Source: Isurus oxyrinchus (Eukaryota). From it: a DNA stretch of 64,000 nucleotides. Below are positions 26,636 through 64,000 of this stretch, one piece after another. The stretch is from NCBI GenBank assembly GCA_026770705.1, contig JANJGN010000039.1:3596001-3660000 (forward strand), written 5' to 3'. The notes under the pieces were generated by a model. That model was not told where the DNA came from, made no database searches, and saw nothing but the letters and a program-made list of their open reading frames with translations. The position numbers were made by a program, and so were the translations under genes. Numbering within the stretch: position 1 is the first letter of the stretch; each line of letters opens with the position of its first letter.

Positions 26636-27525
26636 TTATGAATTGAATAATTTTATGCACAATTTCATAAGGTACAACATCCCATTCTTCAGCTCCTTCC
26701 TAAACTTAGCCTGTGTCAAAACGTAAATGAATGTACTTGTGCAGCAACTGAGAAGTACAAGCATATATGCAACTGATTCAAGCTTATTAAGACCAGAATA
26801 TGAAATAATTATTGTATGCAAAGAGACAAAATATACAACCAGAGTGGCCCACAACAATATACAACTGCTGGATATACTGAACAGTAAATTCATGGATTTT
26901 CTTCGGCTTTCTATCTCTGAATCCTTGTGATGCTCGCCATTGCTGCAAACATGGAGGCCCCTGCGGACCTTATTGACCACTAAAATACGCCTAACCATCA
27001 ACATATTTAGCAACAAAATTAGAATGAATGGAACACTCGGGGTTAAGGTAAGGGTAAAGAAGTCAAATGCGGCCCATCCAGCAGAAATGATAAATGTCTG
27101 TTTTAGGACACAACCGTGATTTACATTGTCCACTATATTTTCAGGTTCATCTGCAAAATACCAGGGAATGTTTATCAAGCAGCTCAACACAGATACCACT
27201 GTTATGATAGCAGTTGCCGTTTTCTCTGTGCAATATTTTTTATTATGCTTCTCACAACATATGGCCACAAAACGATCGAATGTGAACATCACTGTTAGCC
27301 AGACACAGGCTGATGTGACTACATAACTCAGTGTTAGTGTTAGACAGCACACAGGGGGCATTGAGAAGAATGAACTGGGGCAATAAATATCTACTGTACT
27401 CGTAAGTATTACGTCAGTACAAACAACCAGGAGGTCAGTTGCTGCCTTGGCCATCATATAGCATGTAAGACATTTCGAGAGACCACACTTTCCACGGGAA
27501 AGAATCACAATTGCAACAGCATTCA
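26636..27525 (-). CDS. GPR139/GPR142-like orphan class A GPCR, coding exon 2 (late TM1 to C-terminus)
   Basis: Open 890-nt exon after acceptor ttttgtctctacatctctgacag. Reads NAVAIVILSRGKCGLSKC..DLLV (TM2), FTFDRFVAIC (DRY-equivalent), NIPWYF, TPSVPF, LLW (TM6), STFIY..TQAKFRKEL (TM7/helix 8). Confidence 0.93.
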
Positions 27526-30500
27526 CTGTCAGAGATGTAGAGACAAAACATGAAATATTTGACAAAGGTGAAACGGTTTTTTTCCGATGGCAGCAAAGGG
27601 TGCTCAATACATATTTTGTTTATTTTTGCATCATTTCATGTATTTCATCCAAGCATGTGTTGCATGCTTCCTGAGAGTAACGTGTGCTAAACATGGACTG
27701 AACCTTATACAATTGCACACGGATGGGAAACGTTCATTGATTATTCGTTTTCTGGTAGAAAAATCCTCCATTAAGACTGGGCAGCTGTTGGGCCTGTTAA
27801 GCAAGAATGTGAAGAATTTGAAGTCAGAAAAGTGCCTTGGCATGGTAATTTTTCAGTGTGATATGGGACACGGTAAAGAGCCAATTCATGTGTAAAGGTG
27901 CAACGCGATCTGGGCAGAGGACGCAATGTAGAGTCTTGCAATAAGTTCTGGGAATGGGTATTGTGCAACAAGGCTGACAGCTTGAATGCAAAATGTTGCC
28001 CAGATGCACGAATGTACTCAGAACACTTGGGAGGGTAAAGTTGAGATTGAACAGGACAAGGTGTAATAGTGAATAGACTACAAAGAGGTACCAACATATG
28101 CGAGGCTGAGTGAACGTTCACTGGGACATCATAACGGTGGTGGTGAAAGACAATCAAAATAAGGTAAAATGCTTATGCAGATCGCAGGGTGAAGTATTTC
28201 TGCGAGCTTAGGGCCGCTCAGTCAGGTCGTTTAAGGCAATTTGAGTGTTGCAAGATTGATATGCAGGCTAAGCATTATAAAGTTCTGGTTCAGGCGGAAT
28301 GTATCGCTGCTTCATAGCAGCAAGACTGAATTAAAGTTGCTACACAGGCTGGGCAGTCTGAATGGGGCAGTTTAATATCCAACTAGGATGAAGTTATATT
28401 GCTATACCGACTGCTCAGATTGAGTGAGGAACATATATTGGCAAAGAAGAGGTGCTGTGCGGGGCAACGTTTTTTCTGGGCAGGCTAGTTTTTATGTAGA
28501 TTGCATCGATATCGTAAAATGGAGAGGCCATGAGAATCAGAGTGATTCCCACCATATGGCAAATGAACAAATCAAAATTGTTATTCAAACGTGGTGTAAG
28601 TCTGCTTTTCGCTACTCAGGAGTCAGCAGAGATGTTCCCTTCTTTGATCGGATGAAGAACGAAACTCTTGGTTGCTGAAAAGTCAGAAAATATTACTATT
28701 CATCTCAAGAACCGCATCATTGTGAACTGTTTCGATACATGAAGCTGAACACAGATTCCTGTTGGACACCAAGTGCAGAAGATACAGAGAGATATTGACA
28801 GTGATGAACAAATTGACTTGAGTCAGTAACGCATTTGGAAAACTAAGATATGATTAGAAGTGTGAATTTGTGAATTGTTGATGACCTTATATTATCGAAG
28901 TAACTCTTAACAAAACTATATTTATAATAAAACCCTTTGTAGCTAATTTCATTTTAGATTGGGCGGCTCAGAACAGCCGCGAATTTTAAAAGGATTTAGG
29001 AACATTCATGTTTATTTTTCAAAATTCAGGAAACTTTTCATAAATTAGTGAATTAATCTAACGAATAGTTATTACTTGGGAGATTACAGTTAAATCATTT
29101 CGTCTAATAACTGATTACAATCAATAATGAGTATAAATCAAATGGGTTTGCTGTGAACCTTAGCTTGTCAGGGCTGCATGTTATAATTCATGTTGCTTAC
29201 TTAATTAAACACCGTATGCTTTTCGAATTATAACATTTTCAGTTAAACTGATTGAACCAACTTGTTGCTACTGGAAATGCTTTTTTTTCATTGCATACAT
29301 TCGTCAAATTATTATGTACAATTTTTAAAAAAGCATAGAACACGTGCTTTCATTAATATCCAAAGTAAGTAATTGAAAATTTCTGAATTTGAATTGAATT
29401 GAAATTTTGCGTGGAGCCCTGGTGGCTGTGTTGTAAGATCGGAAATCATCGATCTGGTAATCGTGCAGAATATTGTTTAGACTGAAATCTTTGGTCAATC
29501 ACAGGGGCACAGTTTACGGAACGGAAAATTCACATTTTCACAATGGAAGGAAGAATGAATAAGGAGTTCATTTAAGTGCCAAGTGCTTTTTAAGGCTATA
29601 CAAAATGGTGCAGAATGATGTAAAGTTTTTGACATTTAGGATAGCAACAATGCAATGGAGCAAGACTGTCGATGGGTTGACGAAGCAGCGTTTTGAATAA
29701 GATTATTTAATTCAGTTGCTGATTAATGCTTTAAACTAATTTTTAAAGCAATAAGTAGAATTATTCGGAGAAAGGTAAACAGATTTTTATATTTCTGTAA
29801 TGAATGTTGATAAGCTTTGACCACCCAAATAAAAAGCCGTCTCTTCATGTTGCATTCGCAGCTTATGTGGCAGCTGCTGCCTCTCATTCAAACTTTTCAA
29901 ACTCGAAAACAAGCATCAAACTTCATTGACTTGATGAGAAGTGCAACAACTAATTATAAGCAGACTTGCAAAGACTGGGTGATGGGCATAAATTGAAAAT
30001 GCAATTCCTGATGCCAGTGTAGGCTGTACTGGAAAGGAGGGAAGCATTGGAAAATCAAAGCCAGTTTGGTTAAACTACAATCCGAGAGAAATGTTGACAA
30101 AAATAAAGGTTGACATCAGTTGCCCTATACATATCAATGTTTCAGCTGAGCAAAATCAATATTTGTATCAGTACAACACCATGAATTTACAATGAGAGAA
30201 TTAAGTTGTATTTTGCATTCTAGGATTTCACTGTTTTGATTTATATAACGATGTTTCACCAATATATCATCACCCAAATTGTCCTGGCCAGCACTGTCAA
30301 GATGCAACCCTTTAACAAAAACCCAGTAATGTACACAACTATGTACTTAACGAGCCAAAATTAGAATACAACTAATTACAAAAAAAAATAAATTGTCAAT
30401 GCACTTCTTAAATGTTCCTCCAAATATAACGTTGAAATATACATTGAATGAAGTACTCAATTATCTGCCAAATTGAATAGTAAACTAGCAAATACATTAT

Positions 30501-47779: not shown

Positions 47780-47814
47780 AATCAGACAGAGCTAGGTGAT
47801 AAGCATGACCTTTA
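47780..47814 (-). CDS. Repeat gene possible stop-containing exon: VKVMLIT*
   Basis: cattcggtccaacag|TAAAGG...TAG, then donor gtaagt 12 nt after the stop. Confidence 0.5.
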
Positions 47815-50800
47815 CTGTTGGACCGAATGAAATGCACTGGAATATTTGTAAAAACAGAAAGCTGACAAACCAGGAAGGGATTATGCCAGGAAGCGTGTGG
47901 TCAAAACTCATGCCAATGTGATTCTGAAGAGTTTTTGTTGTGCTGCCTATCCTCAGTTCTCAAGGTGCCCGCATTGTCTTGACACCAGCTCACTAAAGAC
48001 ACTTGCAGGGGTAATTCACTGGTCTATTCCCATGTGATTGACTCGAATAATTACAAATTCTCTTCATGCCTCTTGCACTGCCTCATGATCTTACACCCAG
48101 CCTTTTCCCTGTGTCTCGACTCCAAAGATGTTTTAATCAGGGACCAGGTACGACAGGTACAATTTTAAGTACAATTTTTAATGAGTGCTTTTCAGCGGAA
48201 ATATTAGAGTGTACTCCATCTGGGAGGGTGTGATTTTTAGTCAGCAGCTCTAAAACATCAAGGATTGAGCTGAGCAGAAATGCCTGTGGAGCCAAACAAA
48301 GCACATAATTAAAACAAAAAATAACCTGCCAGATAACTGCAATATAACTTTATAAACAGGCGCACCTTCTTACCCATGGTCAAAAATTCAGACAAGAAGT
48401 GCAATGCCCAAATCAGATTGAATATTCCATATTCATCTCTCCACGTTCCAGAAATCTTTGCTCAAAGGGCAACATGAAATTAGTACAGTTTGTTGCAGAT
48501 ATAACGGAGCCAATTCTGCGTGCTGTGTCCGTTTTGGCTTTCAGGTCGAGCTGCTAAATTAATCGCAGCCTTTGCGCATCCACCCCACGCACTATCCCCC
48601 TCCAGTGTCCCCACACGACACCCAACCCGCTCCCCCCGATCAAAAAGAAGCATTCTGGTCATGAGGAATTCTCACTCAGAAGAAATTGCTGCTTGAAAAA
48701 AAGCATCTCCTCATCTCAAAACTGGCTGTTTGATCAATGAGCTCAAATGTATAAGAGCATAATAATTAAAATAAGAATTATTGTAATAATAATAATAATA
48801 GCCTCAGGAGCAGGGCACGTAACCCCTGAGGTGTGCTCTGCCATTCATGGCTGATATTATTTTAATCCCAATTCTAATTAACAGTCTGTTCACCATTACC
48901 CTTGCCAATTCCAGCCATGAATGTCCTTGAATACAGGGGCAAGGACACATTACTGCAGCTGGAAAGACCCGCAGTGAGAAAACACCTGGGGTATTGTGTG
49001 CAGTTTTAGTCTCCTTACCGAATAAAACACACACTTACCATAGGTGGACTCCAGTGAAGGTTCATTGAAGTGATTCCTTGCAATACAGGATTGTCATAAG
49101 AGGGCAGCCTGGGCCGGCTAGGCCTGTACACAGTGGAATTTAAAAAGCTCAGAAGGAATCTTAATGAAACCTAAAGAATTCTGACAGGGCTGGACAGACT
49201 GGGTGAACGGAATGTGAACCTTCTGGCTGGGGGCGATTTAGGTCAAGGGGTCAAAGTCTCATGATCCGGGGTAGGCCATTTAGGACCTCTTCACTCCGAT
49301 GTTGGTGAACAAAGGTTTATGAAGTCCAAATCACTGAATATATTTATGGAGGAGATAGATATATCTCTCATCTCTAAAGACGTCAAAGGTGTATGGCGAC
49401 AGAGTGGCAGCACGGCGTTGAGGTAGTTGGTCATGCATGATCACATTGAATGTTGGAGCAGGCTTGATGAGCCGAATGACCGTCTCCTGCTCTTATTATC
49501 TTTCTTTCTGGGCTATTTTGACGGTCTCTGCAGCTCTCTGGGCTGGATAATGGAAACAAATCAGCACCATCTTAGAGGGGAAGATGCTCCTGGGCGTAAT
49601 CAGTTATAGACGCCTTCTGATTCCCAATCGACGCTCCATTTCTTCTAGATTCCCCCATGAGGGGAAAATTCACTCAATATCCACCCCCTTAACTCCCATC
49701 AAGATTACGAAACGATTTCAAAGCGTTTCCTCATATTCTTCCACACCCCAATGAGTATCAAGCTAAACTGAGTTATTTGAAGAATAAAAAATATTGAACC
49801 TCTTATGGAGGGGTTCCAAATCATTTATATTATTCCTCACATAATGCGATCAATATGGCCTGCAATATGCTCATTTGCAAACTGCGCTGTTGTCCCAATA
49901 AATCCCTATGCTTAAGAGCCAACCGTTTTCAATAAAGGTGAACATTCATTTTCCATCCGGTAGCTGTTCCAACTGCATTCGAATGCTTTGTGTCTCATGT
50001 ACAAGGACATACGGTTCTCTCCATGCCGCAGCATTGTATAATCACTCTCCACTGAAAACCTATTGTTTTTAGAGCGAGTTGTTAACCAACCTTCGTGCAA
50101 TGGAACTGTCGTGTTTTTATTTACACTCTCCAGTGAACAGCAAAAACGCCACCACTTGACATGAGCCCATATCCCTCGAAGAATACCCCTAAATCTCAAC
50201 AGTCTTTGCCCTTAATACGTCCCAGCTTTTTCCAGCTGTCCATTCGTTTTTAGTTACTTATGTACATGGGTTCATAAATGGGCTCCTGAATAAACGCCCC
50301 CCAACCCCACCAACCCCTACCCCGCTTCCCTCTGTGTGTAAAAATAAAGCCATAAAAAATCTTTGAAATTGGGTAAGCATGGATGATTTCCTGTTTCTCA
50401 CGGTGCACCCTGAATTATTTGAAGAATATGAATGCAAACAAATGCTTACGGACACCGTACTCTCGCAGTATTAAAAGATGTTGCAAGACGGCGCTGAGAC
50501 TGGCGGCATCAAGCTTATCCAGAAGAGAGTCGATGATTTCACGAGGTTTCTCTTCCCTGCCAGTTGCTGTTGCTGAAACCATACAGGAATGTTTTTGGCT
50601 TAAACACTGGTTTTATATTTCTGCATCAACAGAATAAACTGATATTCACAAGGCGACTTTCAACATACCGAAAATCAGCTAAAGATGCTAACGGGTGCCT
50701 GATCAGTCAGCCTCAGCTAAATAAACACCTGGGTCAGGTATACCTGAAATGTTCCTGCCATGTATTTGCCTACAAGTTGGAACAAATCAGGGTAGGCTAA

Positions 50801-53800
50801 GGGCAACATTGCCTGGGCTGCAAGAAAGATATAAAAAGGGGAGGAGGGGGTGTGGGGTGTGGTGGGGTGTGGGTTGGGGGCATTCTGGGAGGCAGGGGAT
50901 CAAGCAAATTGTATGGTATCCCTTGAATTTTAAAAATTCAGAAATAACCTTCTCGACATTTCCACGATGTTAACTAGAGCTGAGACTGACGATTGAGAAA
51001 AATAAATGAATAAGTAAACGATTAGCTCATTGGACATGTCAGCATGCTGGGGGTTGTTGCGGATGTTCGTTGCGAGGTGGGTACAAAAGGTAAATAAAAA
51101 AGTAGGCCTGAACTTCTCTAATTGAAATAAAATGAAATGTCATTTAAATGTTAAGCTTTTGATAAGTTGAAGTAATGTTGATTTTGTCTATAAGTGTTTT
51201 CAAATTGAATTTTATACAGTGCCAGACAACAGACCTGTGAGCGAAATTCAATGCCATGGAATAAAAAGGAAAGTAGGCAATTGAATATGAAATTGGCTGA
51301 TTGAAAGGAAGCAGAGAAGAGCGATAGATGGTTGTTTTTCAGATTGGAGGAAGGTTTGGAGTTCCTCAGATAACAATCCTGGGGCCCTTGTTCCTCCTGA
51401 TATATATTAATGACCCAGAATCTGGTGCGCTGGGCATGATTTCAAAATTTGCACATGATATGAAGTTTGAAATTGTTGTGAACTGCGTCGGGGACAATCT
51501 TGAACTTGAAATGGACATAGGTGTGTTAGCGGATCGTGCACAGAAGAGACAGAGGAAGTTCATTGCAGAGAGCGTGAGGTGATTCGTTTCATCAGGAAAG
51601 TTATGGTGAGACGATATGAAATGAAGGAAGAGCTTTTAAAGGACGTGCATGAACAGAGGAATCTCAGTGTATTCGTACATAGGTCTTTGAAGGTGGGAGC
51701 GTGTGTTGAGTGCACAGTTCGTAAATCATATAGTATCTTGGGCTTTATTAATAGGGGCATTGACTACAAGAGTTAGGCGATCTTGTTGAACTTGTATAAT
51801 ACAATAGTTAGAACTCATGTGGAGTGCAGGTCCTGTTTCGGGCACTGTACTTAAGGAAGGATGTGAAGACAATAGATCGAGTACGGAGGAGATTCACAAG
51901 AAATATCCCTGGCATGTAGATTTGTAGCTATGAGGATAGATTGGAGAAGTTGGAACCGCTTTCCCTTGAAGAAAATAAGGCTGAGAGGAAACTTTATTAA
52001 GGTATTGAAGATCCTAAGGAATGTGAACAGGGGAAATAGTGAGGAAATATTCCCACCTAAGGGAGCATCAAGAACGAGATGGCACATATTCAAAATGATT
52101 AGCAAACGTGCAGAAATGAAATGAGGGAAACTGATTTTTTATCGCCCAGATGGGATTTGGCATCCGGAACAAATTTCCTGGAATTAACTGGATGCAATTC
52201 CCATCGAGGATTTCAAAAGGGAATTGGATTCTTACCTGAAAGGAGAGAATATACAAGGTCACAGGGATAAGGCAAAGGATAGTGGACTAGTTAGAATGTT
52301 CTTTCAGAGGGAACTTCATGTGCCAAACAGCCTCCTTCTGCATTGTAAAGATACTGCAATGTTGTGAAGAGATCTTCCAATAATGGGAATTTACCCTTGA
52401 ACAATTATAAAAATTGAGGTGTAGATTAGCAGTTTTGTGAACCAAATGTCCAGAGGGATAGGGGGCCAAGAGGTGAGGGTTATGAACCACAGGAAAGTTA
52501 AAGCACAGAAGGGGCCTAATCAGCCACCGTGTCTGCACCGGCCATGGAAAGAGAAATCCAAATGAACCAGTCGCTCAGTTTTAACCCCAGTTTCCTGCAC
52601 TTGTTCCATAACAATGTGGGTTACAGCACGTCAGGTCCAGACGCAGGTACCATTTAATTCAGTTGAACGTTTCAGATTCAACCACCAGTTTAGGCCGTGA
52701 TTCCCAGGCACCCAGAATCCTCTGGGAAAAAGTGTTTTCTTTATGTCACCCTTAATCCCTCTACCAATGTCAGCCCCCTAACCCCTCCCCCAGCCCATCG
52801 CCGGCACAGCCCCTGCCACACCCCACTCTTCGTTTAATGACTTGGCAGCATTCCTGGAAATCCATTCTGCACAGTCATAGAACACTGTTGCCCTTCCAGT
52901 AATGTGGTGACTGGAATTCTACACAAAATTCCAGCTGCAGCTTAACCAGTATTTTAGACATTTCCAGCATTGCATCCCTGCTTTTGTATTCAATACCTCA
53001 CCCAATAAAGATAAATATTCCATTTGTGTTCTTTACCACCTTATCCACGTGCACTGCAACCTTCGGTGACCTGTTGACATGCACTCCCAAGTCTCCCACT
53101 TTCTCAACCCCAATCAATAAGTTCCAGTTTATTGAGCATCACCTTGCTTGGGTTGCCCTCCCCAAATGCATTAGCTCACGCTTCTTCTGGATTAATTTCT
53201 ATTTGGCAACATTTTGCCTACTCATCCAAACCATTGGTAGCATCATGAAGGCAGCACTTATCCAAATTACTGTTATGTACAGGATCAATTTTTGGTTCCT
53301 CGGAAAATTTTCCAATCACACTTTTAAGTGCAAATTGGATACAAACAGCAATAACCCCAGCACCGAGACCTTTGGAATCCACTGGAAACGCTTTGCAATG
53401 ATAAAGACATCCATCGACCATTGCAATTTGTCTCCTGTCAATGAGCCAACTTTGCATCGAACTTGGCACCTTGTCCCGTATCCAATGGGATCTCACTTTT
53501 TTGACGAGCCTTTCATGTGGGACCTTGTCAAGTGTTTTGCGAATATCCTTGTTTATAACATATGCTGAACTACTCTCATCAATCCTACTTGTTACTTCCT
53601 AAAGAAATGTCTATTTATTTGGTAAGGCACTATCATCAACTAACAAAACCATGCTGACTATCCCTAAACAATCTCTTCCTTTCTAATTGACTGTATATCC
53701 TGCCTCTCACAATTGATACCAATTATTTGACCACCGTCGAAGGCATACTGATTGGACTATAAATCTATGGCCACTCCCTCACAAACTTTTTCAAAATTTG

Positions 53801-56800
53801 GTACAGCTCTTGCAGACTCCCAGTCTTATTCTACCTTGCTTGTATCTAGTGAGGATTGGAAAGTACTCCTCAGAGCATTCGCTATTTCCTCCCTGGCTTC
53901 CTTTAACAGCCTGGTATATTACCCAAAACAAAAGCAGAATTACCTGGAAAAACTCAGCAGGTCTGGCAGCATCGGTGGAGAAGAAAAGAGTTGACGTTTC
54001 GAGTCGTCATGACCCTTACACAGAACTTGAGTTCGAGTCCAAGAAAGAGTTGAAATATAAGCTGGTTTAAGGTGTGTGTGTGGGGGGCGGAGAGATATAT
54101 AGAGAGAGAGGTGGGGGCTGTGTGTGTGGTTGTATGAACAAACAAGCAGTGATAGAAGCAGATCATCACAAGATGTCAACGACAATAGTACCATAGAACA
54201 CATAGGTGTTTAAGTTAAAGTTGGTGATATTATCTAAACGAATGTGCTAATTAAGAATGGATGGCAGGGCACTCAAGGTATAGCTCTAGTGGGGGTGTTT
54301 TTTTATAATGGAAATAGGTGGGAAAAGGAAAATCTTTATAATTTATTGGGAAAAAAAGGAAGGGGGAAACAGAAAGGGGGTGGGGATGGGGGAGGGAGGT
54401 CACAACCTAAAGTTTTTCAATTCAATGTTCAGTCCAGAAGGCTGTAAGGTGCCGAGACGGAAGAGGAGGTGTTGTTCCTCCAGTTTGCGTTGGGCTTCAC
54501 TGGAACAATGCTGCAAGCCAAGGACAGACATGTGGGCAAGAGAACAGGGTGGAGTGTTAAAATGGCAAGCGACAGGGAGGTTTGGGTCATTCTTACAGAC
54601 AGACCGCAGGTGTTTTGCAAAGCGGTCGCGCAGTTTACGTTTGGTCTCTCCAATGTAGAGGAGACCATATTGGGAGCAACGAATGCAGTAGACTAAGTTG
54701 GGGGAAATGCAAGTGAAATGCTGCTTCACTTGAAAGGAGTGTTTGGGCCCTTGGACGGTGAGGAGAGAGGAAGTGAAGGGGCAGGTGTTACATCTTTTTT
54801 GTGGGCATGGGGTGGTGCCATAGGAGGGGGTTGAGGAGTAGGGGGTGATGGAGGTTTGGACCAGGGTATCTTGGAGGGAGCGATCCCTATGGAATTCCGA
54901 TAAGGGGGGTGAAGGGAAGATGTGTTTGGTGGTGGCATCATTCTGGAGTTGGTGGAAATGGCGGAGGATGATCCTTTGAATGCGGAGGCTGGTGGGGTGA
55001 TAAGTGAGGGCAAGGGGGACACTATCATGTTTCTGGGAGGGAGGAGAAGGCATGAGGGCGAATGCCCCACACAAAAGAAGTAACACCTGCCCATTCACTT
55101 CCTCTCTCCTCACCGTCCAAGGGCCCAAACACTCCTTTCAAGTGAAGCAGCATTTCACTTGCATTTCCCCCAACTTAGTCTACTGCATTCGTTGCTCCCA
55201 ATGTGGTCTCCTCTACATTGGAGAGACCAAACGTAAAGTGGGCGACCGCTTTGCAGACCACCTGTGGTCTGTCCGCAAGAATGACCCAAACCTCCCTGTC
55301 GCTTGCCATCTTACCACTCCACCCTGCTCTCTTGCCCACATGTCTGTCCTTGGCTTGCTGCATTGATCCAGTGAAACCCAACGCAAACTGGAGGAACAAC
55401 ACCTCATCTTCCGATTAGGCACCTTACAGCCTTCCGGACTGAATATTGAATTCAACAACTTTAGGTCGTGAGCTCCCTCCACCATCCCCACCCACTTTCT
55501 GTTTCCCCCTTCCTTTTTTTCCCAAGAAATTATAAAGATTTTCCTTTTCCCACCTATTTCCATTATAAAAAAAACATCCCCACTAGAGCTTTACCTTGAG
55601 TGCCCTACCATCCATTCTTAATTAGCACATTCCTTTAGATAATATCACCAACTTTAACTTTAACACCTATGTGTTCTATTGTACTATTGTCGTTGACATC
55701 TTTTGATGATCTGCTTCTATCACTGCTTGTTTGTCCACACAACCACCTCTCTCTCTCTCTATCTCTCCGCCCCCCCACACACACACCTTAAACCAGCTTA
55801 TATTTCAACTCTTTCTTGGACTCGAAATCAAGTTCTGTCGAAGGGTCATGAGGACTCGAAACGTCAACTATTTTCTTCTCCGCCGATGCTGCCAGACCTG
55901 CTGAGTTTTTCCAGGTAATTCTGTTTTTGTTTTGGATTTCCAGCATCTGCAGTTTTTTTGTTTTTATCTTGGTATATTTCCCATCTGGCCCTGGTAATTT
56001 ATTGAACTTCAGTGAAGCCATTCCTTCAGTGCACCCTCTCTCACTATGCTTATTGCATGTAAGCTTTCACATTCCGAACCCCTTAAGTAGAATGTCTGTC
56101 ATAAGGCCTTTTTTATCTGCTTTATCTTAACCCAGAAACTTCTAGGTAAATTTAGGTCATTGAATGAGGACACAATCTTGAACGGATGAATGAACTACTG
56201 GTGCTCGTATTTCTTTATGAGAAATAGACAGAGATGGTAGTATCAACAGCAGAGGCTTATTAGAGAATGGGAAGAAGTGGAACACAGGGAACACCGTATG
56301 GCAAACATTCCATCTCTGCCCCTTGGTTTCTGACATCAAGAGCATCATTATTTTTAACAACTCCAACATTAGTTACCAACTGCTTATATTCTGAACTTAT
56401 GAATCCCTCTGCCAAGCCTTTCTGCCTCTTTAATTGTCTCTGTTCCTTAAAACCACCCCTTTGGATGAAATCCTGATTAGCCTGTCCTCACGCCTCCTTA
56501 TATGAAGCGGTGTTAAATGACCGTTTGATATCATTGCTGTCAATCGCTACAATTAGTTTGTGTACTAAATGGTGCTCTATAACTAATGGTTATCATTCTC
56601 ATACACATGGCCAGATTTTGAATCGGTGACCAATGGTTAAAAGCAAGAGGCAAATCCTCAAACAGAAGTTAAGCACAGTGCATGCTGGGAATCTGATTTG
56701 CCTCCTTAGCCACGAGACCCAGGCCTCAAGCCAAGCTGGATATAATCATAGATTCACAGAGGTTAAAAGGACAATAAAAGGACATTCGGCCCATCGAGCC

Positions 56801-59409
56801 TGCGCCATGCAATCACCCAACTATTCTAATCCACTTTCTCAGTACTAGGCCATAGCCTTGATGGGACATCACAAATGCACACATCAGCTCAACATGTTAG
56901 TGATTGTACATTTTTCTGTCAGTATCCTTGAACTTTGATTGTGTAATAATAAACTGTAGACATACATTAATTTGTTTGTATAATAATAACCTATGGGCTT
57001 CCATGAGCTTCGCGTGTATAATAATAAACTGTGGACATACATGAACATTGATTGTTTAATAATAAACTGTTGGCACGCGTGTTCTTTTAGATATCTTAGA
57101 CGATAGGAGCTGTGACTCACCTCCAGCAATGGAGATATAGCTTGATATAATCTGCTCAAAACTTATCAGATCTCCTTCCTCTGTCTGGTCGAGAAGATAG
57201 TCGAGATTTTGTCGATGAGTCTTTGCATTGTTCCAGTCACCACTGGAGATAATTCCTGTAAGTGAAATGAAGAGCAGTCACAGAAGCCAACACCAAACGT
57301 TCGCACTGTGGAGTTAGAATTTGTAAAGTGCTTGACATAGGAGACCGAGGACTTGGCTTTTCATTGACTGGGGAGTGTGTGACGGAGGCGATGTGTAACG
57401 TAGTTCAAGACATGTCTGACAATAGCCAAGTGATGATTATCAAGAATGTACAAGGGCCTGGATCTGGAGGAATGCAAGGAGCCAGGAGGGTTTGAATGAC
57501 TGGAGGATGGAAAGGACAGAGCGATTTGCTAATAGCATATATGAAAATGTTAAAGTTCTGTATCCTTATCCAGTGAAGGTCCGTGGATCCGTGGATCCCC
57601 GGTTGACGAATGAATGTGGACATCATTGAGCAGGAAACCTTATCACTCAACAGAACGGTTACAATCCACCTGCAGAACTCACTTTGAATGTCGTTTCTGA
57701 AGACTAAGAGCTGATTAAAGAAGAAGGCGAGCAGATTGTCATCACAGCGGTCGAGCAGATCACTGATCCTCTGCCGGGAATTCTTCAGACTTCCAGAGAC
57801 CTTAACTAGAAATAAGAGAGCAGCATTTTTCAGAGTACATTAGTTCTATCAATCTGGCAGAAAAGACAGAAATGAAACGAAGGAAGAGGGAAGTTAGTTT
57901 GGAAGAAATGAATGATGTATGGCAGTGAATGCCGTGAAGAGGGATGCAATTGAAGGTAGGAAGGGGGAATAGAAAGTGGTTGGAATTACATAGAATATAC
58001 CGCGCTGTAACTGATCACGCGGCCCTTTTAACCTGGGATGGTGTTTAGACTTCACCAAGTCTCATCCCATTGTCGCTTCTCATTTCAACCTAGCATCCCA
58101 TATATCCAATCACCTTTATACAAGTGCTCTCCCAGGATCACTTTAAGATGCCTGCCAGAAACATTTGCTGTGCTCATGCATTACACAGTACACCCACTTA
58201 CTCAATGAAGAAATGAGAGCTTCTCTAAGCATCAGTCAATAATTATTATGGATAGGGCGAGAATTCCTTTCCACAGAAATTGTGTGCATTCACTCTACGT
58301 GAACCCTGCCTAAACCATTCACAATTTTAAAGGATTCTTCCTCTTAAAAGTCAACACAAACTAATCTCTAACGTAATTACAATAGTGACTTCCTGCACAA
58401 TAATATATAATTTTGCATAGATTGCTATGCAGAAAGAGGCCACTTGGGTCAGCGTGTCTTCACCAGCTGGAAAACGACCCGTCTTACCTCATCCTAATAT
58501 CCAGCATTTGTTCTGTAAGTGCCAACAACACTTCATGTGCGTATCCACACACATTTTAAGTGAAATGAGGGTTTCTGCCTCGACTACACTTTCAGGCAAT
58601 GAGTTCTGGATCCCTGCATTCCACAGTCTGAAAGAAATTCTCAACTCCCTTTCTATTTTTTTACAAACGTCAACTTAAATCTATGCCACCAAATCACTGT
58701 TCTCTCTGGTAAAGGAAATATCACCATCATATGTTCTCTAGCCAGGCCCCTAATAATTATGTACATGTCAACATATCCACCCCTGGGACTCCTCTGTTCC
58801 ATGGAGAACAGCCCCAGTGGATCCATTCTTTCTGCACAGCTGCAGTTTTCCAGTGCGAAGTGGCGACATCCTCTAAAGCCTCCACTGTATCTTCTCCAAT
58901 ACAATCAGATCTTTGCTGTAATACGGTGACCAGCACTACACACAGGAATCACTTGTTGTCTGATTAATGCTTTGTGCAGTTGCAGTATATCCGCCATGCT
59001 TGTCTTTTCTATACCTCAGTTAGAAATAAAAAATTCCATAGGCCCTCTTAAACTCTTTGTAAACCTGTCCTGCTATTCAGGAACATGTGGGGAATCACTG
59101 CAAGGATTTCGGAAGAAAGGAAGGAGTTAAGAGTGGGTGGAAGCATCGTATCTATAAAAGAAGAGAGGACAATTAAAGCCTCCAAAATAGGAATCAAAAT
59201 TGAGCAAATGTTTCTGCTCTCTTATTCCTAGTCATGCAACAAAAAAATTCAAGGAAACCATCGCTTAGAGCGACAGGGTCGGCCTTACAGCTGATGAAGT
59301 CTCTGAAGGTCAACATGTGCCTCAAGACGAACTGAAGATTCGGAGTGTCGAACTTATTCAAAATGTCCTCGATCTTCCCGCGAGGGTTTTCATCAGTCAT
59401 GGACGCCAT
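47792..59409 (-). CDS. Unidentified multi-exon gene encoding a ~216-aa protein with four ~41-45-aa helical repeats; coding exons 59409-59289, 57805-57683, 57255-57121, 50572-50450, then (less certain) 50051-50013, 48460-48374, 47814-47792
   Basis: The four main exons have polypyrimidine-AG acceptors and strong donors (gtaagg, gtgagt, gtgagt, gtaagc). All are phase 1-1 with lengths 123/123/135/123 nt, stop-free when joined, and align to each other without gaps. Confidence 0.8.
48374..48460 (-). CDS. Repeat gene possible exon: PKISGTWRDEYGIFNLIWALHFLSEFLTM
   Basis: Good donor ATGG|gtaaga; 87 nt, phase 1-1 and open, but requires a rare GAG acceptor. Confidence 0.4.
48820..49505. mobile_element. 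CR1 3' fragments (short minus-strand tail 48820-48910 joined to a plus-strand piece 48910-49505)
   Basis: cacacctggggtattgtgtgcagttttagtctcc; 3' hairpin region gagcaggcttgatgagccgaatg. Confidence 0.7.
50013..50051 (-). CDS. Repeat gene short exon: LESDYTMLRHGEN
   Basis: ggttttcag| ... AACC|gtatgt; 39 nt, phase 1-1. Confidence 0.55.
50450..50572 (-). CDS. Repeat gene exon R4: ATATGREEKPREIIDSLLDKLDAASLSAVLQHLLILREYGV
   Basis: ctgtatggtttcag| ... GTCC|gtaagc; 123 nt; closest to R1. Confidence 0.85.
51170..52350 (+). mobile_element. CR1 LINE RT and 3' part
   Basis: GVPQITILGPLFLLIYINDP..MISKFAHDMK; ILGFINRGIDYKS; RLRGNFIKVLKIL. Confidence 0.88.
53926..55969. mobile_element. Penelope-like element, tail-out inverted pair (left arm minus 53926-~55061, right arm plus ~55062-55969)
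   Basis: 242-aa ORF 54400-55128 carries a complete GIY-YIG domain (LVYCIRCSQYGLLYIGETKR...LEEQ...PSGLNIE); ORF 55004-55366 is its mirror. TSD tggtatatt(a/t)ccca at 53912-53925 and 55970-55983. Confidence 0.95.
55831..55869 (+). ncRNA. Minimal type I hammerhead-ribozyme-like motif in the Penelope terminal repeat (homologs at 34570-34608 -, 36795-36832 +, 53989-54027 -, 43720-43757 -, 45345-45379 +)
   Basis: AGTT-CTGTCGA-A-GGGTC-atgag-GACTC-GAAAC-GTC-AACT: stem I AGTT/AACT, stem II GGGTC/GACTC, palindromic ACGT in place of stem III. Confidence 0.7.
56300..56595 (+). mobile_element. L2-class LINE 3' end
   Basis: ...tccttaaaaccaccccttt...aaatggtgctctataactaatggttatcatt resembles an L2-type 3' terminus. 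Confidence 0.55.
56940..57075. repeat. Local imperfect direct repeat (aataataaactgt...catacat...ttgttt)
   Basis: taataataaactgt occurs three times within ~130 bp. Confidence 0.75.
57121..57255 (-). CDS. Repeat gene exon R3: RIISSGDWNNAKTHRQNLDYLLDQTEEGDLISFEQIISSYISIAG
   Basis: ctcttcatttcacttacag| ... GGAG|gtgagt; 135 nt. Confidence 0.85.
57683..57805 (-). CDS. Repeat gene exon R2: FKVSGSLKNSRQRISDLLDRCDDNLLAFFFNQLLVFRNDIQ
   Basis: ctctcttatttctag| ... CAAA|gtgagt; 123 nt. Confidence 0.85.
58410..59090 (-). mobile_element. CR1 LINE 3' fragment
   Basis: ERMDPLGLFSMEQRSPRGGYVDMYIIIRGL (ORF 58653-58904). Confidence 0.75.
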
Positions 59410-59411
59410 TG
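59289..59411 (-). CDS. Repeat gene exon R1 (probable start): MASMTDENPRGKIEDILNKFDTPNLQFVLRHMLTFRDFIS
   Basis: tattttcag|CAATGG ... AGCT|gtaagg; 123 nt. Confidence 0.85.
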
Positions 59412-59769
59412 CTGAAAATACAGATCAACATTTTTTGTTCCCTGATTGGTCAAACCAGAAATCAGATGCGACCTAAAAAGTCATAACACGAGTGGGGCCA
59501 TGAAACAATGGAGCTGCCAGCAGCTGGGAGTCAGAATGATCAATGTCTGTGGGAGAATCAATGATTATCGCAAAAAAAAACTGCATTTATGTAGTGCCTA
59601 TCAGGATCTCAGTTCGTCTTAAAGAGTTTCACAGCCAGATAATTATATTTTAGAAATATGCGCAATCTATGTTGAAAGGTGTATATTGTGGTTGCCAATC
59701 AGTAAACAGAAAATATCTTCATATTTCTGTAATGTTCACTTAAGTGGAAAGTATTTGTTTCAGGACACT

Positions 59770-60420
59770 AGCGGTATTCAAACGCATTACCAATTTTAAA
59801 ACCCTGACCATCAAGATCTTGGGAAGCAACATTGAGCAGTAACTGAACTGGACCAGGCATAGAAAAGATTTGGCTACAAGAGCATGCCAGAGGCCGGGAA
59901 TCCCGCTGCAATTACTCACCTCCTGATTGCCCAAGCCATGCCCAACACCTACAAGTCACAAGTCAGGGGTGTTATGGAATATTCTCCTCTTCTCTGGACG
60001 GGCGCAGCTCCAACAACACTCAAGAAGCCACCATCCAGGGCAAAGCTGCCTGTTTGAATGTCACCCCACCTATAAGCATTAGGCCCCCACCATCGATGCA
60101 CAGTAGTAGCAGTTTGTGTGATCTACAACATGCACTGCAGTAACTCACCAAAGCTTCTGAAATGGTACCTTCTACATCCACCACTACTACCATTTAGGAG
60201 GAAAAGGGCAGCGGATATATGGCAACTGCACCAGCTGGAAGATCCACTGCAAGCTATAGGTCATCCTGACATAGAATTGTATCATCATCTCTTCACTGCC
60301 GCTGAGTCAGAATCCTGGAACTGCCACCCTAACAGCGCTGTGGGTGCACCTACACTAACAGGGTCTGCTGTGATTCAAGATGGCAGCTCAACACTACTTT
60401 CTCAAGGGATATTTAGGTTT
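59770..60420 (+). mobile_element. Family B LINE 3' fragment
   Basis: Collinear with 2560-3170 (cattgagcagtaactgaactggacc, ctccaacaacactcaagaagc, tcaagatggcagctca). Confidence 0.75.
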
Positions 60421-60954
60421 TTCAACAAACGCTCATCTAAGCAGCTCCTATATCATTTAAATGTATGATTAATAATAACAACCACTTGTGCTTGGTCGAA
60501 TGCATGTGAGGAATATTTTACACCTTCAAACAGATGGGTGAGCAATGAGGTGAGTTGTGAGTGATAGACGGAGTGGGGGGGGGGGGGGGGCAGGGGAGTG
60601 AAGGAATGAGGGAGAAAGGAATTGAGGTCAAGTCTGATGGAAACAGTGAGACTGAAACTGCATAAAATAAGCTCCAGTTCCGTGATTCGATGCTGTTGCA
60701 AATCATTAAGTCAATTGACCTTACAGAATCCAAAGTCCAGAGCATAAACGTTTTTCAGTGATAACGGCAATATATGTTTATTATTCGTGCTCTGTATTAT
60801 TGGCTAAGGTTTTTCATTATACTATAACTGTGTAAATACAATGTCGACAACAGTCAGCACTCTGAGGTGGAATATCAAGGGATCCAGTCACACTCAAGAA
60901 ACTTTAGCCCAATGCTCCTAGCCTGCAAATGTTGTTTAGCAGTTCTAACAGAGA

Positions 60955-61350
60955 GCTGCATTTGCAGAGGGTGAGCAATCAGGGAGCGCTGTACTATGGG
61001 AGAGTCAGTACTGAGGGAGTGCTGCACTGTCGGAGGGTCAGTATTCAGGGAGCACTGCACTGTCAGAGAGTCAGCACTGAGGGAGTGCTGCACTGTTGGA
61101 GGATCAATACTGAGGGTGCGCTGCTCTGTCTTATTTCAGTACTGACATTGTGATGCACTTTCGGAAGGTCAGTTTTGAGGCAGCGCCGCAGTGCTGGTGA
61201 TCAGCACAGACAGAGTGCTGCACTTTTAGAGGCTTTGTACTGAGAGAGCCTTGCATTTTCGGAAATGGTCTATAAAGGGAATGCTGCACTGTCAACCTTC
61301 TGTACTGAGTTCCTGCTGCCTTGTCAGAGGGCCAGATAATAATGAGCTCC
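60955..61350. repeat. ~30-bp minisatellite (gtactgagggagtgctgcactgtcggagggtca-like), about a dozen copies
   Basis: Direct inspection; copies become more degenerate toward 61350. Confidence 0.9.
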
Positions 61351-61606
61351 GCACTTTTGGGCTGGCTGCTCAGACAGATGAAACATAGGTTCTTTCAGTA
61401 ATGAAGAGACATTCGTTCGCCAAAGGTTATGAAGAGGTTCTGCGTAACTCCAGTTTTCGGTGTTGGGTGAGGGCTGTACTGTTCTCTATCACATTATTCG
61501 AAGGGGAAAAGTTTTTTTTAAAAAAAGACAATTCGTGCTCGCTCACGTTTTCGAAACTTTCTACCCTAAGCACCTGTATAGACAAGAGCAGCAACATTTC
61601 ACTTAC

Positions 61607-61685
61607 TCGTAGGGGCTTTGGAGCTGGTTGTGGGAATCGAGATATGCACTCACGCTCACAGGGCGAGAATGAATTAAACATACAT
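61607..61685 (-). other. Probable 5'UTR exon 2 of the repeat gene (contains uATGs)
   Basis: attctctgtag|ATGTATG...CTACGA|gtaagt; 79 nt. Confidence 0.6.
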
Positions 61686-61779
61686 CTACAGAGAATTTTC
61701 AATAGACAATCAATCGCACAGTACTTTGAAAAAGCTAATATTGCACACATTAATTCTGTGAGAAAAATGTGTAAGTTAC

Positions 61780-61945
61780 CTTGGATCACTGCTTTCTGCT
61801 TGTACACCAGAAGCTTCTCAGATCAATGCCCTGAAAGTCGATCTGCCAAGAAGTGTCAATACCAGCTGATCGAAGTTCAGATCTTATCGATGTGAATGAT
61901 TCAAAATCAAGAAGTGAAGTCCCGCCCCCTTTTAACTACAAAGGC
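61780..61945 (-). promoter_or_regulatory. Probable promoter and first non-coding exon of the repeat gene
   Basis: Donor CCAAG|gtaact at 61780/61779; minus-strand gttaaaagggggcggga (AT-rich element plus GC box) at ~61920-61940. Confidence 0.4.
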
Positions 61946-62224
61946 TTGGAATGCAAAGCTGGGGGAAGCACATTGCAGTTTACAGAGCCTGTGTCAGATC
62001 CTGCCAGCAGCGAACAGCAACTGGATCTTGGCAGCTAAGGGGGACACTGCGCAGGTGTATGCGAATGTTGCCGTGGGATGAAAGAGTTTGATGGTGGACC
62101 GGCTGAATTAACAATGTTGACAATGGATGATTAAGTGATATGGTTGTGTGCTTTACAGCAATAAATCCCTTTTAAGACGGTGTCGAGAACAAAGTGATAC
62201 TATTGGTGTGGCATTCAGGAGGCA

Positions 62225-62545
62225 CGGCAGGCAGCACGGGGAGATGGTGGCGCATTGTAATCAAAGATCTCCGCAGCATCCAGTGGAAGCTAAACTCAGC
62301 TGTTACATATGGACATATAAAACTCATCTCATTTATGGTGACGAACTATGTAAAAACGCATCTGGTTCATTAATGTCCGTTAGGGAAAGAAATCTGCCGC
62401 CCTTATGCGCTGTGCGAGACATGTGACCACAGGGCCACTGCAATGTGGTTGAGTATTAAACAGCCGAGAAGAACATTCAGTTCCAGCGCAATTGGGGATG
62501 GTAAACAAATGCTGCACTTGCTAATCCACCGACATTCCAGGAAAC
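62225..62545 (+). mobile_element. tRNA-derived SINE sharing its 3' tail with LINE family B
   Basis: ctggttcattaatgtccgttagggaaagaaatctgcc...caatgtggttga...ggggatggtaaacaaatgctg; the tail matches those near 40690 and 46975. Confidence 0.7.
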
Positions 62546-64000
62546 AGCAACAAACAAATTATTAAAACACTGTTAGTGGAAATTTGGAACTGACTCCAAA
62601 AAAGGGATCAACTTTGGTTTTCGAGACTGAGACTGAGGCATTTAACAGAAGGAGGATGAAGGTATTTGAAGGTAAGTTGGTGGAATTGAGTTAGTGAGCA
62701 GGGCACATTTTTATTATTACAATCTGGTGCAGGCTCCAGGTGCTCCTTGCCTCTCATCTGTTCCTAAATAAATGTTCAAATGAATTTATGGCCTCTTTCT
62801 GTCCCAGTGCCAGAGGCCCAAGGGGCTGAATGGCCTTCTCCTGTTATTATGCACCAGGTTCGACGGGATTTGGGACACCAGTGCGATTGTCTCCTTGTCC
62901 TAGAACAAAGGACAAGTTGCATCAAGTCTCCAAAATGCCGAGCATGTGGCTAAACAATCCCAGCGCACATTTTGCATTGTTTGACGGATTTAAATCTTCA
63001 TTGATAGGGGCGCACGCCTCCGCCTGATAAAGCCGCCATTTTGGATTTCAACACTCAATGAAACACCCTCACTTTGCCCCTCAGTGATGGACATGCGAAC
63101 AAGAACTAGAATGACCCCCAAGCCTCCAAAGAATACCCTTTGTTGTTGAGTTGCTGATTGATTTCGACTGGTGGTTGTTAAGTGGATTAAAGTCATTGGT
63201 GTATTTTGTACTGCTAGGTCAAGTTACTGCAGCTTACATGAAGTCTTCTTTCGCGTGGTGAAGGCCATGAATCTGAACATGATGTTTCTGCTCAGATCTC
63301 CCGCACCCAATCACGAGAGAAATGTTTCCGCCTACCTTGGTCTGTAGTCTGGCCGGTAGAATGGACAGAGGATACCCAGAGTGCGACAGGGCCCTGGGAA
63401 AGGGAGGAATGTGTTTTCAGATTTGAGTCTACAGGCATAAATTCTACAACGTATCCTCAATGAAGAGCAGTGTGAAATATATTTGATTCCCTCTACCTTT
63501 TCTCATGAAATCTGCTCCTTTTCCGGAAGAATGAATAATGCTTTTTATCGCTAATGAAGGTGATAGTGGCCATTTTAACCCGATATCTAACTGGTCGCTA
63601 CCCAGAAAATTAGAGGGGAATTTAACTATGTTCTATATGCAAAGAATGCATACTATGTTTCCTTTTCACTCAGCAGGAAGCAGAGAAACCAAGGAGAAGC
63701 AGGAGGCAGATGAGGGAGATGGAGTGGAATGGATCTCACTAACCCACGCAGATCCTTTCTGACTGGACGGCCGATCTTGGCCTCATCTGACTTTGGCACC
63801 AGTGAATGCAATAACAAACTCTCAGTGAACATCAGAGCCACACTTTAATTTCTGCCGGTACTGTGCCCTCTCTGGCACAATGAAGAAACGAAATGTACCA
63901 CAGAAATAAATCTTGTAATTTTTTAAATCAAACTGTTAATCAATTTCATTCAGAAATCAACAAATTATCTTCTGCTTTCGCTTTGTACCCGCCGTCTGAC

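What the first reader, a model, noticed from the sequence alone, without database searches (positions are those of the whole stretch)
47780..61945. Hidden multi-exon gene built from one-exon-one-repeat modules of an unrecognised ~41-aa helical domain
Seen in sequence: four minus-strand exons scattered among retroelements (59411-59289, 57805-57683, 57255-57121, 50572-50450) have consensus splice sites, are all phase 1-1, and three are exactly 123 nt. Their peptides align without gaps: RGKIEDILNKFDTPNLQFVLRHMLTFR / RQRISDLLDRCDDNLLAFFFNQLLVFR / RQNLDYLLDQTEEGDLISFEQIISSYI / REIIDSLLDKLDAASLSAVLQHLLILR. The consensus is RxxIxxLLDxxDxxxLxxhhxxhhxhR, consistent with a helix-turn-helix. Conservation is mainly at the protein level and no exon has a stop, which implies selection. 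Two upstream UTR exons and a GC box complete a gene model. Inference: a ~216-aa cytosolic protein with no signal peptide, belonging to no family I recognise. The ORF track shows only R1.
Basis: partly seen in the sequence, partly recalled or inferred. Interest (0 to 1): 0.9.

Follow-up and report, generated by a model that had tools for sequence, protein, structure and literature searches.

The report
Expressed shark gene with four helical repeats
This is a real, transcribed and correctly spliced small gene, found so far only in some sharks, that encodes a 175-residue protein made of four copies of an unclassified two-helix repeat whose function is not known.

Summary
Four minus-strand exons (59411-59289, 57805-57683, 57255-57121, 50572-50450) have AG/GT borders, are phase 1-1 and are open in one frame.

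Contigs of three RNA-like runs from one sample carry the predicted junctions. These are 5' exon to e1, e1/e2 and e2/e3, plus a loose end at 57121 that continues into e4. A DNA-like run lacks all of these joints.

I found a fifth coding exon at 48283-48258, encoding (R)ISAQLNP and a stop. The CDS is therefore 525 nt, or 175 aa, not about 216 aa.

A profile of the four exon peptides, searched against 1.84 billion proteins, found only shark proteins. They are automatic "uncharacterized protein" models: 175 aa in Cetorhinus maximus (at least 10 loci) and Mustelus asterias (4), a partial one in Scyliorhinus torazame, and later Heterodontus francisci.

Pfam, PDB sequences, Foldseek and the ESM Atlas give nothing significant. 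AlphaFold models are weak (pLDDT 60-63) but show eight helices in four hairpins. PYD and CARD domains recur among sub-threshold structural matches, which is a lead only.

Verdict: a real but uncharacterised shark-restricted gene family. The function is inferred, not shown. The scan had already noted this same stretch once (s1-897782), not other DNA.

The parts
61921..61929 (-). GC box (Sp1-like) just upstream of the 5' exon; putative promoter element
   Evidence: Read directly. No functional test was done. The transcription start was not mapped, because contigs cannot show starts.
61780..61900 (-). 5' non-coding exon. The 3' end is exact at 61780. The 5' end is approximate.
   Evidence: Joints 59411->61780 (X2, depth 109.8) and 57805->61780 (X2, 47.9), both with GT..AG on the minus strand. 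There is no ATG in 61925-61781. It is homologous to part of the N-terminal extension of Cetorhinus models P0002 and P0011, but the window carries stops there.
59289..59411 (-). Coding exon 1 (repeat 1), 123 nt. The ATG is at 59409-59407, with G at -3 and G at +4.
   Evidence: Joint 57805->59289 is seen in X1 (170.5) and X2 (119.7). tblastn with P0001 gives 83% identity, E 4.6e-19.
57683..57805 (-). Coding exon 2 (repeat 2), 123 nt, phase 1-1
   Evidence: RNA contigs are identical to the window over 124 nt in X1 and X2 and over 105 nt in X3 (table 8). tblastn with P0001 gives 90% identity, E 2e-19.
57121..57255 (-). Coding exon 3 (repeat 3), 135 nt, phase 1-1. It is the repeat most unlike the other three, but the best conserved between species.
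   Evidence: The e2/e3 joint 57254/5->57682/3 is seen in X1 (242.9), X2 (181.4) and X3 (44.8). Fifteen of the 19 invariant columns of A2 lie in this repeat.
50450..50572 (-). Coding exon 4 (repeat 4), 123 nt, phase 1-1
   Evidence: The loose end at 57121 in X2 and X3, reverse-complemented, equals the first 30 nt of this exon at 29 of 30 letters (read by eye). tblastn with P0001 gives 78% identity, E 1e-16.
48258..48283 (-). Coding part of exon 5. Two bases complete an Arg codon, followed by ISAQLNP and TGA. The 3' UTR continues downstream; ATTAAA lies at 48182 and 48137, and the true end is not determined.
   Evidence: The tail is identical to that of Cetorhinus P0001. This junction lies outside the stretch laid, so it rests on homology and the AG acceptor only.
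53923..55935 (.). Penelope-like retroelement palindrome inside intron 3. It is not part of the gene product.
Evidence: Inverted repeats I1-I3. The ORF at 54400-55128 matches GIY-YIG at E 8.4e-5.
63338..63391 (-). Possible alternative upstream exon, by homology only
   Evidence: 89% identical over 18 aa to the N-terminal extension of Cetorhinus model P0002. It is followed by GT. It lies outside the laid stretch, so there is no RNA evidence.

Best explanation
Window positions about 61900 to 48258 on the minus strand hold an intact, transcribed, GT-AG spliced gene. It has one 5' non-coding exon and five coding exons, and its CDS is 525 nt (175 aa).

Each of the first four coding exons encodes one unit of about 41 residues: a short helix, a turn and a longer helix. 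The four units are ancient internal duplicates that have been kept at the protein level.

The gene belongs to a multi-copy family found so far only in galeomorph sharks. The family has no detectable relative among characterised proteins.

Shown here: the exons, their splicing, their transcription, conservation of the 175-aa architecture in other sharks, and the lack of any known domain.

Inferred: the product is a soluble intracellular all-alpha protein. It has no signal peptide or hydrophobic span by eye, and pI is about 6.4 in its relatives. Its eight amphipathic helices probably pack into a small bundle that serves as a protein-protein interaction module, that is an adaptor or regulator. 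Repeat 3, the best conserved part, is the likeliest binding surface. I put about 0.3 on this mechanism. The confidence value given here refers to the gene and family statement.
For: - Exon anatomy.
- Spliced contigs in X1-X3 at exactly the predicted junctions. In those runs, bins that overlap exons reach depths of about 30-213, against 0-11 in non-repeat intron bins. None of these joints appears in the DNA-like run X5, which covers all 30 bins.
- The window's own copy is expressed. X3 record 17 matches 57121-57199 with 0 differences and then runs on into e4.
- Relatives: 175-aa proteins in Cetorhinus and Mustelus, a 202-aa model in Heterodontus and an 88-aa partial in S. torazame, 49-63% identical between orders, with one one-residue alignment gap (the 203 columns of A3 = the 202 residues of P0018 plus one) across the core.
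- Repeat homology. Codon-position pattern.
- Two independent AlphaFold runs place eight helices at the same positions, two per exon.
- No Pfam, PDB-sequence, Foldseek or Atlas relative.
Against: - The function is untested.
- The structure models are low confidence (mean pLDDT 60.0 and 62.7, pTM 0.47 and 0.50), so the packing of the helices is not established.
- Of 9 exon differences listed between the window and paralogous or allelic transcripts, 7 change the residue and 2 do not. That is about what no constraint would give, so recent copies show no clear purifying selection. The numbers are small and the table was truncated (251 rows not shown).
- 'RNA' for X1-X3 is the tool's guess. I infer it from the splicing and the exon/intron depth contrast.
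- The e4/e5 junction and the 3' end have no read support.
- The tissue of expression is unknown, because sample identities are coded.
Confidence: 0.85

Rival explanations
1. The protein is a derived death-fold (PYD/CARD-like) module. It would act as a small decoy or adaptor in shark innate-immune or cell-death signalling, by analogy with PYD-only and CARD-only proteins.
For:
- Multi-copy, lineage-restricted families are common among immune genes (general knowledge).
Against: - In model 2 the top rows are designed three-helix bundles and docking domains.
- The models themselves have pLDDT of about 60.
- No PYRIN, CARD, Death or DED hit appears in Pfam even at E up to 10, or among PDB sequences with either profile.
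- Foldseek found nothing at E up to 0.001.
- A death fold is one six-helix unit of about 90 aa, not four 41-aa duplicates.
Confidence: 0.12
2. The four hairpins form a short open alpha-solenoid of the HEAT, TPR or Sel1 type, rather than a closed bundle. The protein would then act as a scaffold.
For: - The unit length is about 41 aa, with two helices per unit and one unit per exon.
- The repeats are homologous to one another.
Against: - No HEAT, TPR, Sel1 or ARM model matched in Pfam at E up to 10.
- No solenoid protein stands out in the fold searches.
- pTM of about 0.5 gives no reliable tertiary arrangement.
Confidence: 0.15
3. This is a recently amplified, transcribed but functionally dispensable family. 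Its copies would drift neutrally and spread by segmental duplication.
For: - Many near-identical copies exist in Cetorhinus (95-99% identical).
- Several paralogous transcripts, and intron contigs 2-8% diverged, are seen in organism A.
- The nonsynonymous to synonymous count among listed differences is 7 to 2.
Against: - The 175-aa length, the start, the stop position and all four repeats are kept across three shark orders, with no frame disruption and one one-residue alignment gap across the core.
- The codon-position pattern among the old internal repeats shows long-term protein-level constraint.
- Repeat 3 has 15 invariant residues.
Confidence: 0.1
4. The exons are only the N-terminal module of a larger gene, for example a receptor with a large downstream exon, as with the N-terminal peptide repeats of teleost NLR-B30.2 genes.
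For: Teleost NLRs carry N-terminal peptide repeats of about 30 aa that shuffle between family members (Howe et al. 2016, PMC4852459; passages read).
Against: - Exon 5 ends in a stop, and its tail is identical to that of the Cetorhinus 175-aa proteins.
- The profile search of 1.84 billion proteins found no NLR or other long protein with these repeats. The only long hit, P0006, is an unrelated repetitive protein at E 3.6e-4.
- The window has no NACHT-sized ORF. The largest ORF is a 323-aa GPCR 21 kb away.
Confidence: 0.03

Closest known systems
Automatic gene models 'uncharacterized protein LOC144672842' and paralogues (Cetorhinus maximus), LOC144486488 and paralogues (Mustelus asterias), an uncharacterized protein of Heterodontus francisci, and scyTo_0023665 (Scyliorhinus torazame)
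   Same: They share the same four repeats in the same order. The Cetorhinus and Mustelus models have the same 175-aa length, and Cetorhinus has the same C-terminal tail. The window's exons are 78-90% identical to P0001 and 50-67% identical to P0003.
   Different: These are predictions without any described function or domain. The window's copy was not among the proteins returned from the collection (no exact look-up of it was made). Some Cetorhinus models (301 and 336 aa) read upstream exons as coding. In the window those exons carry stops.
Death-fold domains (PYD, CARD)
   Same: Both are small all-alpha intracellular modules. Weak structural matches recur in both models.
Helical hairpin repeats (HEAT, TPR, Sel1-like)
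   Same: The unit is two helices of about 41 residues, arranged in tandem.
   Different: No Pfam model matches. There are only four units, and their signature (R..I..LLD..D...L..hL..LL..R) is not one I can assign to those families. That last point is from recall, not a test.
N-terminal peptide repeats of teleost NLR-B30.2 proteins (Howe et al. 2016, PMC4852459; passages read)
   Same: Both are short peptide repeats found in a lineage-restricted, amplified family.
   Different: The teleost repeats are about 30 aa and sit in front of a NACHT domain. The shark protein is stand-alone, and the profile search found no NLR. I could not compare the sequences directly.

Membership tests
Shark 175-aa four-repeat family (Cetorhinus LOC144672842-like) | Four homologous units of about 41 aa in the order R1-R4 | tested here: met
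   tblastn of P0001 and P0003 maps R1-R4 onto e1-e4 in order, at E 1e-10 to 6e-20. The profile search returns these proteins with 4 matched stretches.
Shark 175-aa four-repeat family (Cetorhinus LOC144672842-like) | Total length of 175 aa with a short C-terminal tail encoded after R4 | tested here: met
   The exon lengths 121+123+135+123+23 sum to 525 nt. The tail (R)ISAQLNP plus stop is identical to that of P0001.
Shark 175-aa four-repeat family (Cetorhinus LOC144672842-like) | The same exon-intron structure in the relatives | not testable with these tools
Death-fold superfamily (PYD/CARD/DD/DED) | Match to a death-fold sequence profile | tested here: not met
   No such Pfam family appears at E up to 10, either for the four exon peptides or for P0001, P0003, P0011 and P0002. 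No death-fold chain appears in the PDB profile searches.
Death-fold superfamily (PYD/CARD/DD/DED) | Six-helix antiparallel bundle of about 90 aa | tested here: inconclusive
HEAT/TPR/Sel1-like solenoid repeats | Match to a repeat profile | tested here: not met
   Searches list no such family at E up to 10.
HEAT/TPR/Sel1-like solenoid repeats | Two antiparallel helices per unit, stacked into a superhelix | tested here: inconclusive
   Two helices per unit are predicted. The stacking is not reliable at pTM of about 0.5.
Teleost NLR-B30.2 N-terminal peptide repeats | Repeats followed by Fisna/NACHT in the same protein | tested here: not met
   A stop follows exon 5. The window has no NACHT-sized ORF. 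There is no NLR among the profile hits.

The most novel reading that the evidence does not exclude
The roughly 41-aa unit is a previously unclassified helical domain. It arose in galeomorph sharks, or diverged there beyond recognition from a death-fold ancestor. The amplified 175-aa proteins are stand-alone regulators or decoys of shark innate-immune or cell-death assemblies, which would make them a new class of small signalling adaptors specific to cartilaginous fish.
Probability: 0.12. Interest if true: 0.75.

Novelty: new variant of a known kind. Interest (0 to 1): 0.45.

Why it matters
The result shows that a first-pass reading of raw sequence can recover a real, unannotated, expressed gene.

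It also adds a documented member, with exact exon borders and splice evidence, to a shark-restricted family that exists in databases only as unnamed automatic models. That family is not covered by Pfam, and I found no paper on it (the searches covered only the open-access library).

The family has been kept for the whole history of galeomorph sharks and is amplified to at least 10 loci in the basking shark. It is therefore a candidate for lineage-specific biology.

If the weak death-fold resemblance were real, the family would bear on how inflammasome-type signalling is organised in cartilaginous fish. As it stands, this is one of many taxonomically restricted small proteins of unknown function.

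Tried and rejected
Tried without result:
- Pfam on the four exon peptides gave only E 0.14-0.16 hits, below the cut-offs. Pfam on four full-length relatives gave at best DBD_HTH at E 0.013, 15.7 bits against a cut-off of 25.
- PDB sequence searches were run with the family profile and with the repeat profile. The first gave 1 hit at E 0.85 to a designed protein. The second gave 3 hits at E 0.12-3.6. None is meaningful.
- Foldseek against the PDB gave 0 matches at E up to 0.001, with TM of about 0.2.
- The ESM Atlas gave no usable hit for e4 or for P0001.
- Literature searches for the family's accession numbers gave 0 papers. A search on shark lineage-specific families gave 41 papers; I saw the 10 listed, in the listing only, and none was relevant.
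- A look-up of earlier findings by words gave nothing related.

Rejected:
- A fifth repeat at 41988-41812. It scores E 0.87 and is only a hydrophobic stretch.
- P0006 as a relative. It is a 1093-aa, highly repetitive, low-complexity protein at E 3.6e-4. This is my judgement from its sequence.
- The 301-aa and 336-aa Cetorhinus forms as the true product. The equivalent upstream exons carry stops in the window.

Could not do:
- Read support for e4/e5 and the 3' end.
- A direct profile comparison with a PYD alignment, because no PYD sequence was available from a tool.

The window's exons were never joined into one protein for any search or fold. Full-length analyses used natural database proteins (P0001, P0003 and their relatives). 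No supplements were requested.

Full report
**1. The observation**

On the minus strand, the four segments 59411-59289, 57805-57683, 57255-57121 and 50572-50450 are 123, 123, 135 and 123 nt long. Each is preceded by a pyrimidine-rich tract and AG, and each is followed by GT. Each is open in only one of three frames, the one that makes every exon phase 1-1. Exon 1 starts with two bases and then ATG, with G at -3 (once spliced to the 5' exon) and G at +4.

A profile of the four peptides finds only these four places among 2210 open six-frame pieces of the window (E 2.5e-24 to 6.4e-20). The next best is E 0.87 and is a chance hydrophobic stretch. That scan is circular, so the evidence in sections 2 and 3 is what counts.

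**2. Transcription and splicing**

One search for sequencing runs gave four small runs of one sample (X1-X4, organism A, kind guessed as RNA). It also gave six large runs of organism B, each holding about 27% of the words.

I laid X1, X2, X3 and X5 on 57000-62900, which is 5901 letters. X1-X3 carry contigs with these joints, all GT..AG on the minus strand:

| Joint (window places) | Junction | Depth by run |
|---|---|---|
| 57805->59289 | e1/e2 | X1 170.5, X2 119.7 |
| 57254/5->57682/3 | e2/e3 | X1 242.9, X2 181.4, X3 44.8 |
| 59411->61780 | 5' exon to e1 | X2 109.8 |
| 57805->61780 | 5' exon to e2, skipping e1 | X2 47.9 |

- At 57121, contigs of X2 and X3 run on into letters whose reverse complement equals the first 30 nt of e4 at 29 of 30 positions. 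I compared these by eye.
- X3 record 17 matches e3 without any difference and then continues that way, so the window's own copy is expressed.
- In X1-X3, bins that overlap exons reach depths of about 30-213, while intron bins without high-copy repeats have 0-11.
- X5 covers all 30 bins with contigs collinear with the genome, differing by about 3-4%. It has none of these joints.
- I therefore read X1-X3 as RNA and X5 as DNA of a close relative or of paralogous copies. This is an inference; the tool marks the kinds as guesses.
- Variant joints with a few extra letters (57255->57684, 57805->59293), and intron contigs 2-8% diverged, show that several paralogues exist and are transcribed in organism A.

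**3. Relatives**

The alignment of the four separate exon peptides (A1) was searched as a profile against 1.84 billion representative proteins. Six proteins had E up to 0.001:

- P0001: 175 aa, E 5.5e-68, four matched stretches
- P0002: 301 aa
- P0003: 175 aa
- P0004: 88 aa
- P0005: 60 aa, an exon-1 read-through from an unnamed JGI contig
- P0006: 1093 aa, E 3.6e-4, a repetitive protein that I judge unrelated

By exact look-up, the named proteins are:

- **Cetorhinus maximus.** P0001 is 'uncharacterized protein LOC144672842', with eight further members of its cluster from other loci or isoforms. P0002 is another Cetorhinus locus.
- **Mustelus asterias.** P0003 is one of four loci.
- **Scyliorhinus torazame.** P0004 is a partial hypothetical protein.

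Two word-based searches of 5.8 billion clusters added only a 202-aa protein of Heterodontus francisci. In the second search, 5 proteins passed among 8000 candidates scored. A blank for other species says little, because unannotated genes such as this one would be missed.

tblastn puts the relatives onto exactly e1-e4. P0001 is 78-90% identical and P0003 is 50-67% identical. Between orders the full proteins are 49-63% identical, with one one-residue alignment gap across the core (the 203 columns of A3 = the 202 residues of P0018 plus one).

These species belong to Lamniformes, Carcharhiniformes and Heterodontiformes. That assignment is from recall, not from a call.

**4. The complete gene model**

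The relatives end in a short tail after repeat 4. A search for that tail found it once, at 48281, behind an AG acceptor at 48283. Two bases there complete the Arg codon begun by the last base of e4. The sequence ISAQLNP and TGA follow.

The coding lengths 121+123+135+123+23 sum to 525 nt, or 175 codons. This is the same length as in Cetorhinus and Mustelus, and not about 216 aa.

The 5' exon ends at 61780. It has no ATG between 61925 and 61781, and it lies just downstream of a GC box at 61929-61921.

The longer Cetorhinus models translate upstream exons. In the window these carry stops, at 61867-61781. A further possible upstream exon at 63391-63338 rests on homology alone.

Intron 3 holds a Penelope-like palindrome at 53923-55935, with a GIY-YIG match. 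The intron between the 5' exon and e1 holds very high-copy repeats.

**5. The repeats**

Profile-profile comparison of the four units across species gives these P values:

| Pair | P |
|---|---|
| R1/R4 | 6e-11 |
| R1/R2 | 1.9e-6 |
| R3/R4 | 7.6e-5 |
| R2/R4 | 1.4e-4 |
| R2/R3 | 0.0023 |
| R1/R3 | 0.21 |

- As DNA, the 123-nt exons are 44-52% identical. Identity is 45-65% at codon positions 1 and 2 and 30-38% at position 3. The duplication is therefore old and was kept at the protein level.
- Repeat 3 is the most divergent from its sisters, yet it holds 15 of the 19 invariant columns of the family alignment.

**6. What kind of protein**

The relatives have pI 5.0-6.4, slightly negative GRAVY and no Trp in two of the three computed. 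By eye there is no N-terminal hydrophobic signal and no membrane span.

Two AlphaFold runs were made, on P0001 and P0003, each with a 13-row alignment. They are of low confidence (pLDDT 60.0 and 62.7, pTM 0.47 and 0.50). They agree on eight helices, one short and one long per exon.

Sequence-level searches find no family. Foldseek finds nothing, and the Atlas finds nothing.

The exhaustive structural search gave the following:

All of these lie below the tool's stated noise level for helical proteins.

**7. Mechanism**

Shown: this is a real spliced mRNA encoding a conserved 175-aa four-repeat protein in an amplified, shark-restricted family.

Inferred: it is a soluble intracellular helical bundle or short solenoid that works by binding other proteins, with repeat 3 as the likeliest interface. 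I put about 0.3 on this.

Evidence against strong constraint among recent copies: 7 of the 9 listed exon differences change the residue.

**8. Comparison and novelty**

The nearest known things are the unnamed automatic models themselves. The teleost NLR N-terminal repeats are about 30 aa and sit in front of a NACHT domain (Howe et al. 2016, PMC4852459; passages read). They are an analogy in gene architecture only.

I found no paper on the family. The open-access library is incomplete, and I did not request supplements, which were announced as closed.

I rate this an unclassified variant of the small helical-repeat kind. It is real and of moderate interest.

Noticed in passing
window 26636-27607 (-): An intact single-exon ORF of 323 aa matches the rhodopsin-family GPCR profile (7tm_1, E 3.9e-14). 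The closest solved relative is GPR139, at only E 1.9e-7, so this is a divergent receptor gene about 21 kb downstream of the repeat gene.
   Followed up: partly
window 60940-61267: A tandem array of a 33-nt unit (6 register copies of a 66-nt reference) has an enormous word depth in the DNA-like run X5 (about 6.7 million in the bin 60940-61136). It is also present in the RNA-like runs, so it is a very abundant genomic satellite or SINE-tail repeat.
   Followed up: no
window 53923-55935: A Penelope-like element is arranged as a palindrome, with arms of 508, 244 and 165 nt that are 84-96% complementary. GIY-YIG ORFs lie on both strands.
   Followed up: partly
window 57805 / 61780: An alternative transcript joins the 5' exon directly to e2 and skips e1, which holds the start codon (X2, depth 47.9). 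The same join appears in Cetorhinus model P0002. Its coding consequence in this species is unclear.
   Followed up: no
P0010 (Cetorhinus isoform X2): This 147-aa isoform replaces repeat 4 with an unrelated 21-residue tail. The family may therefore have alternative 3' exons. I did not look for an equivalent in the window.
   Followed up: no
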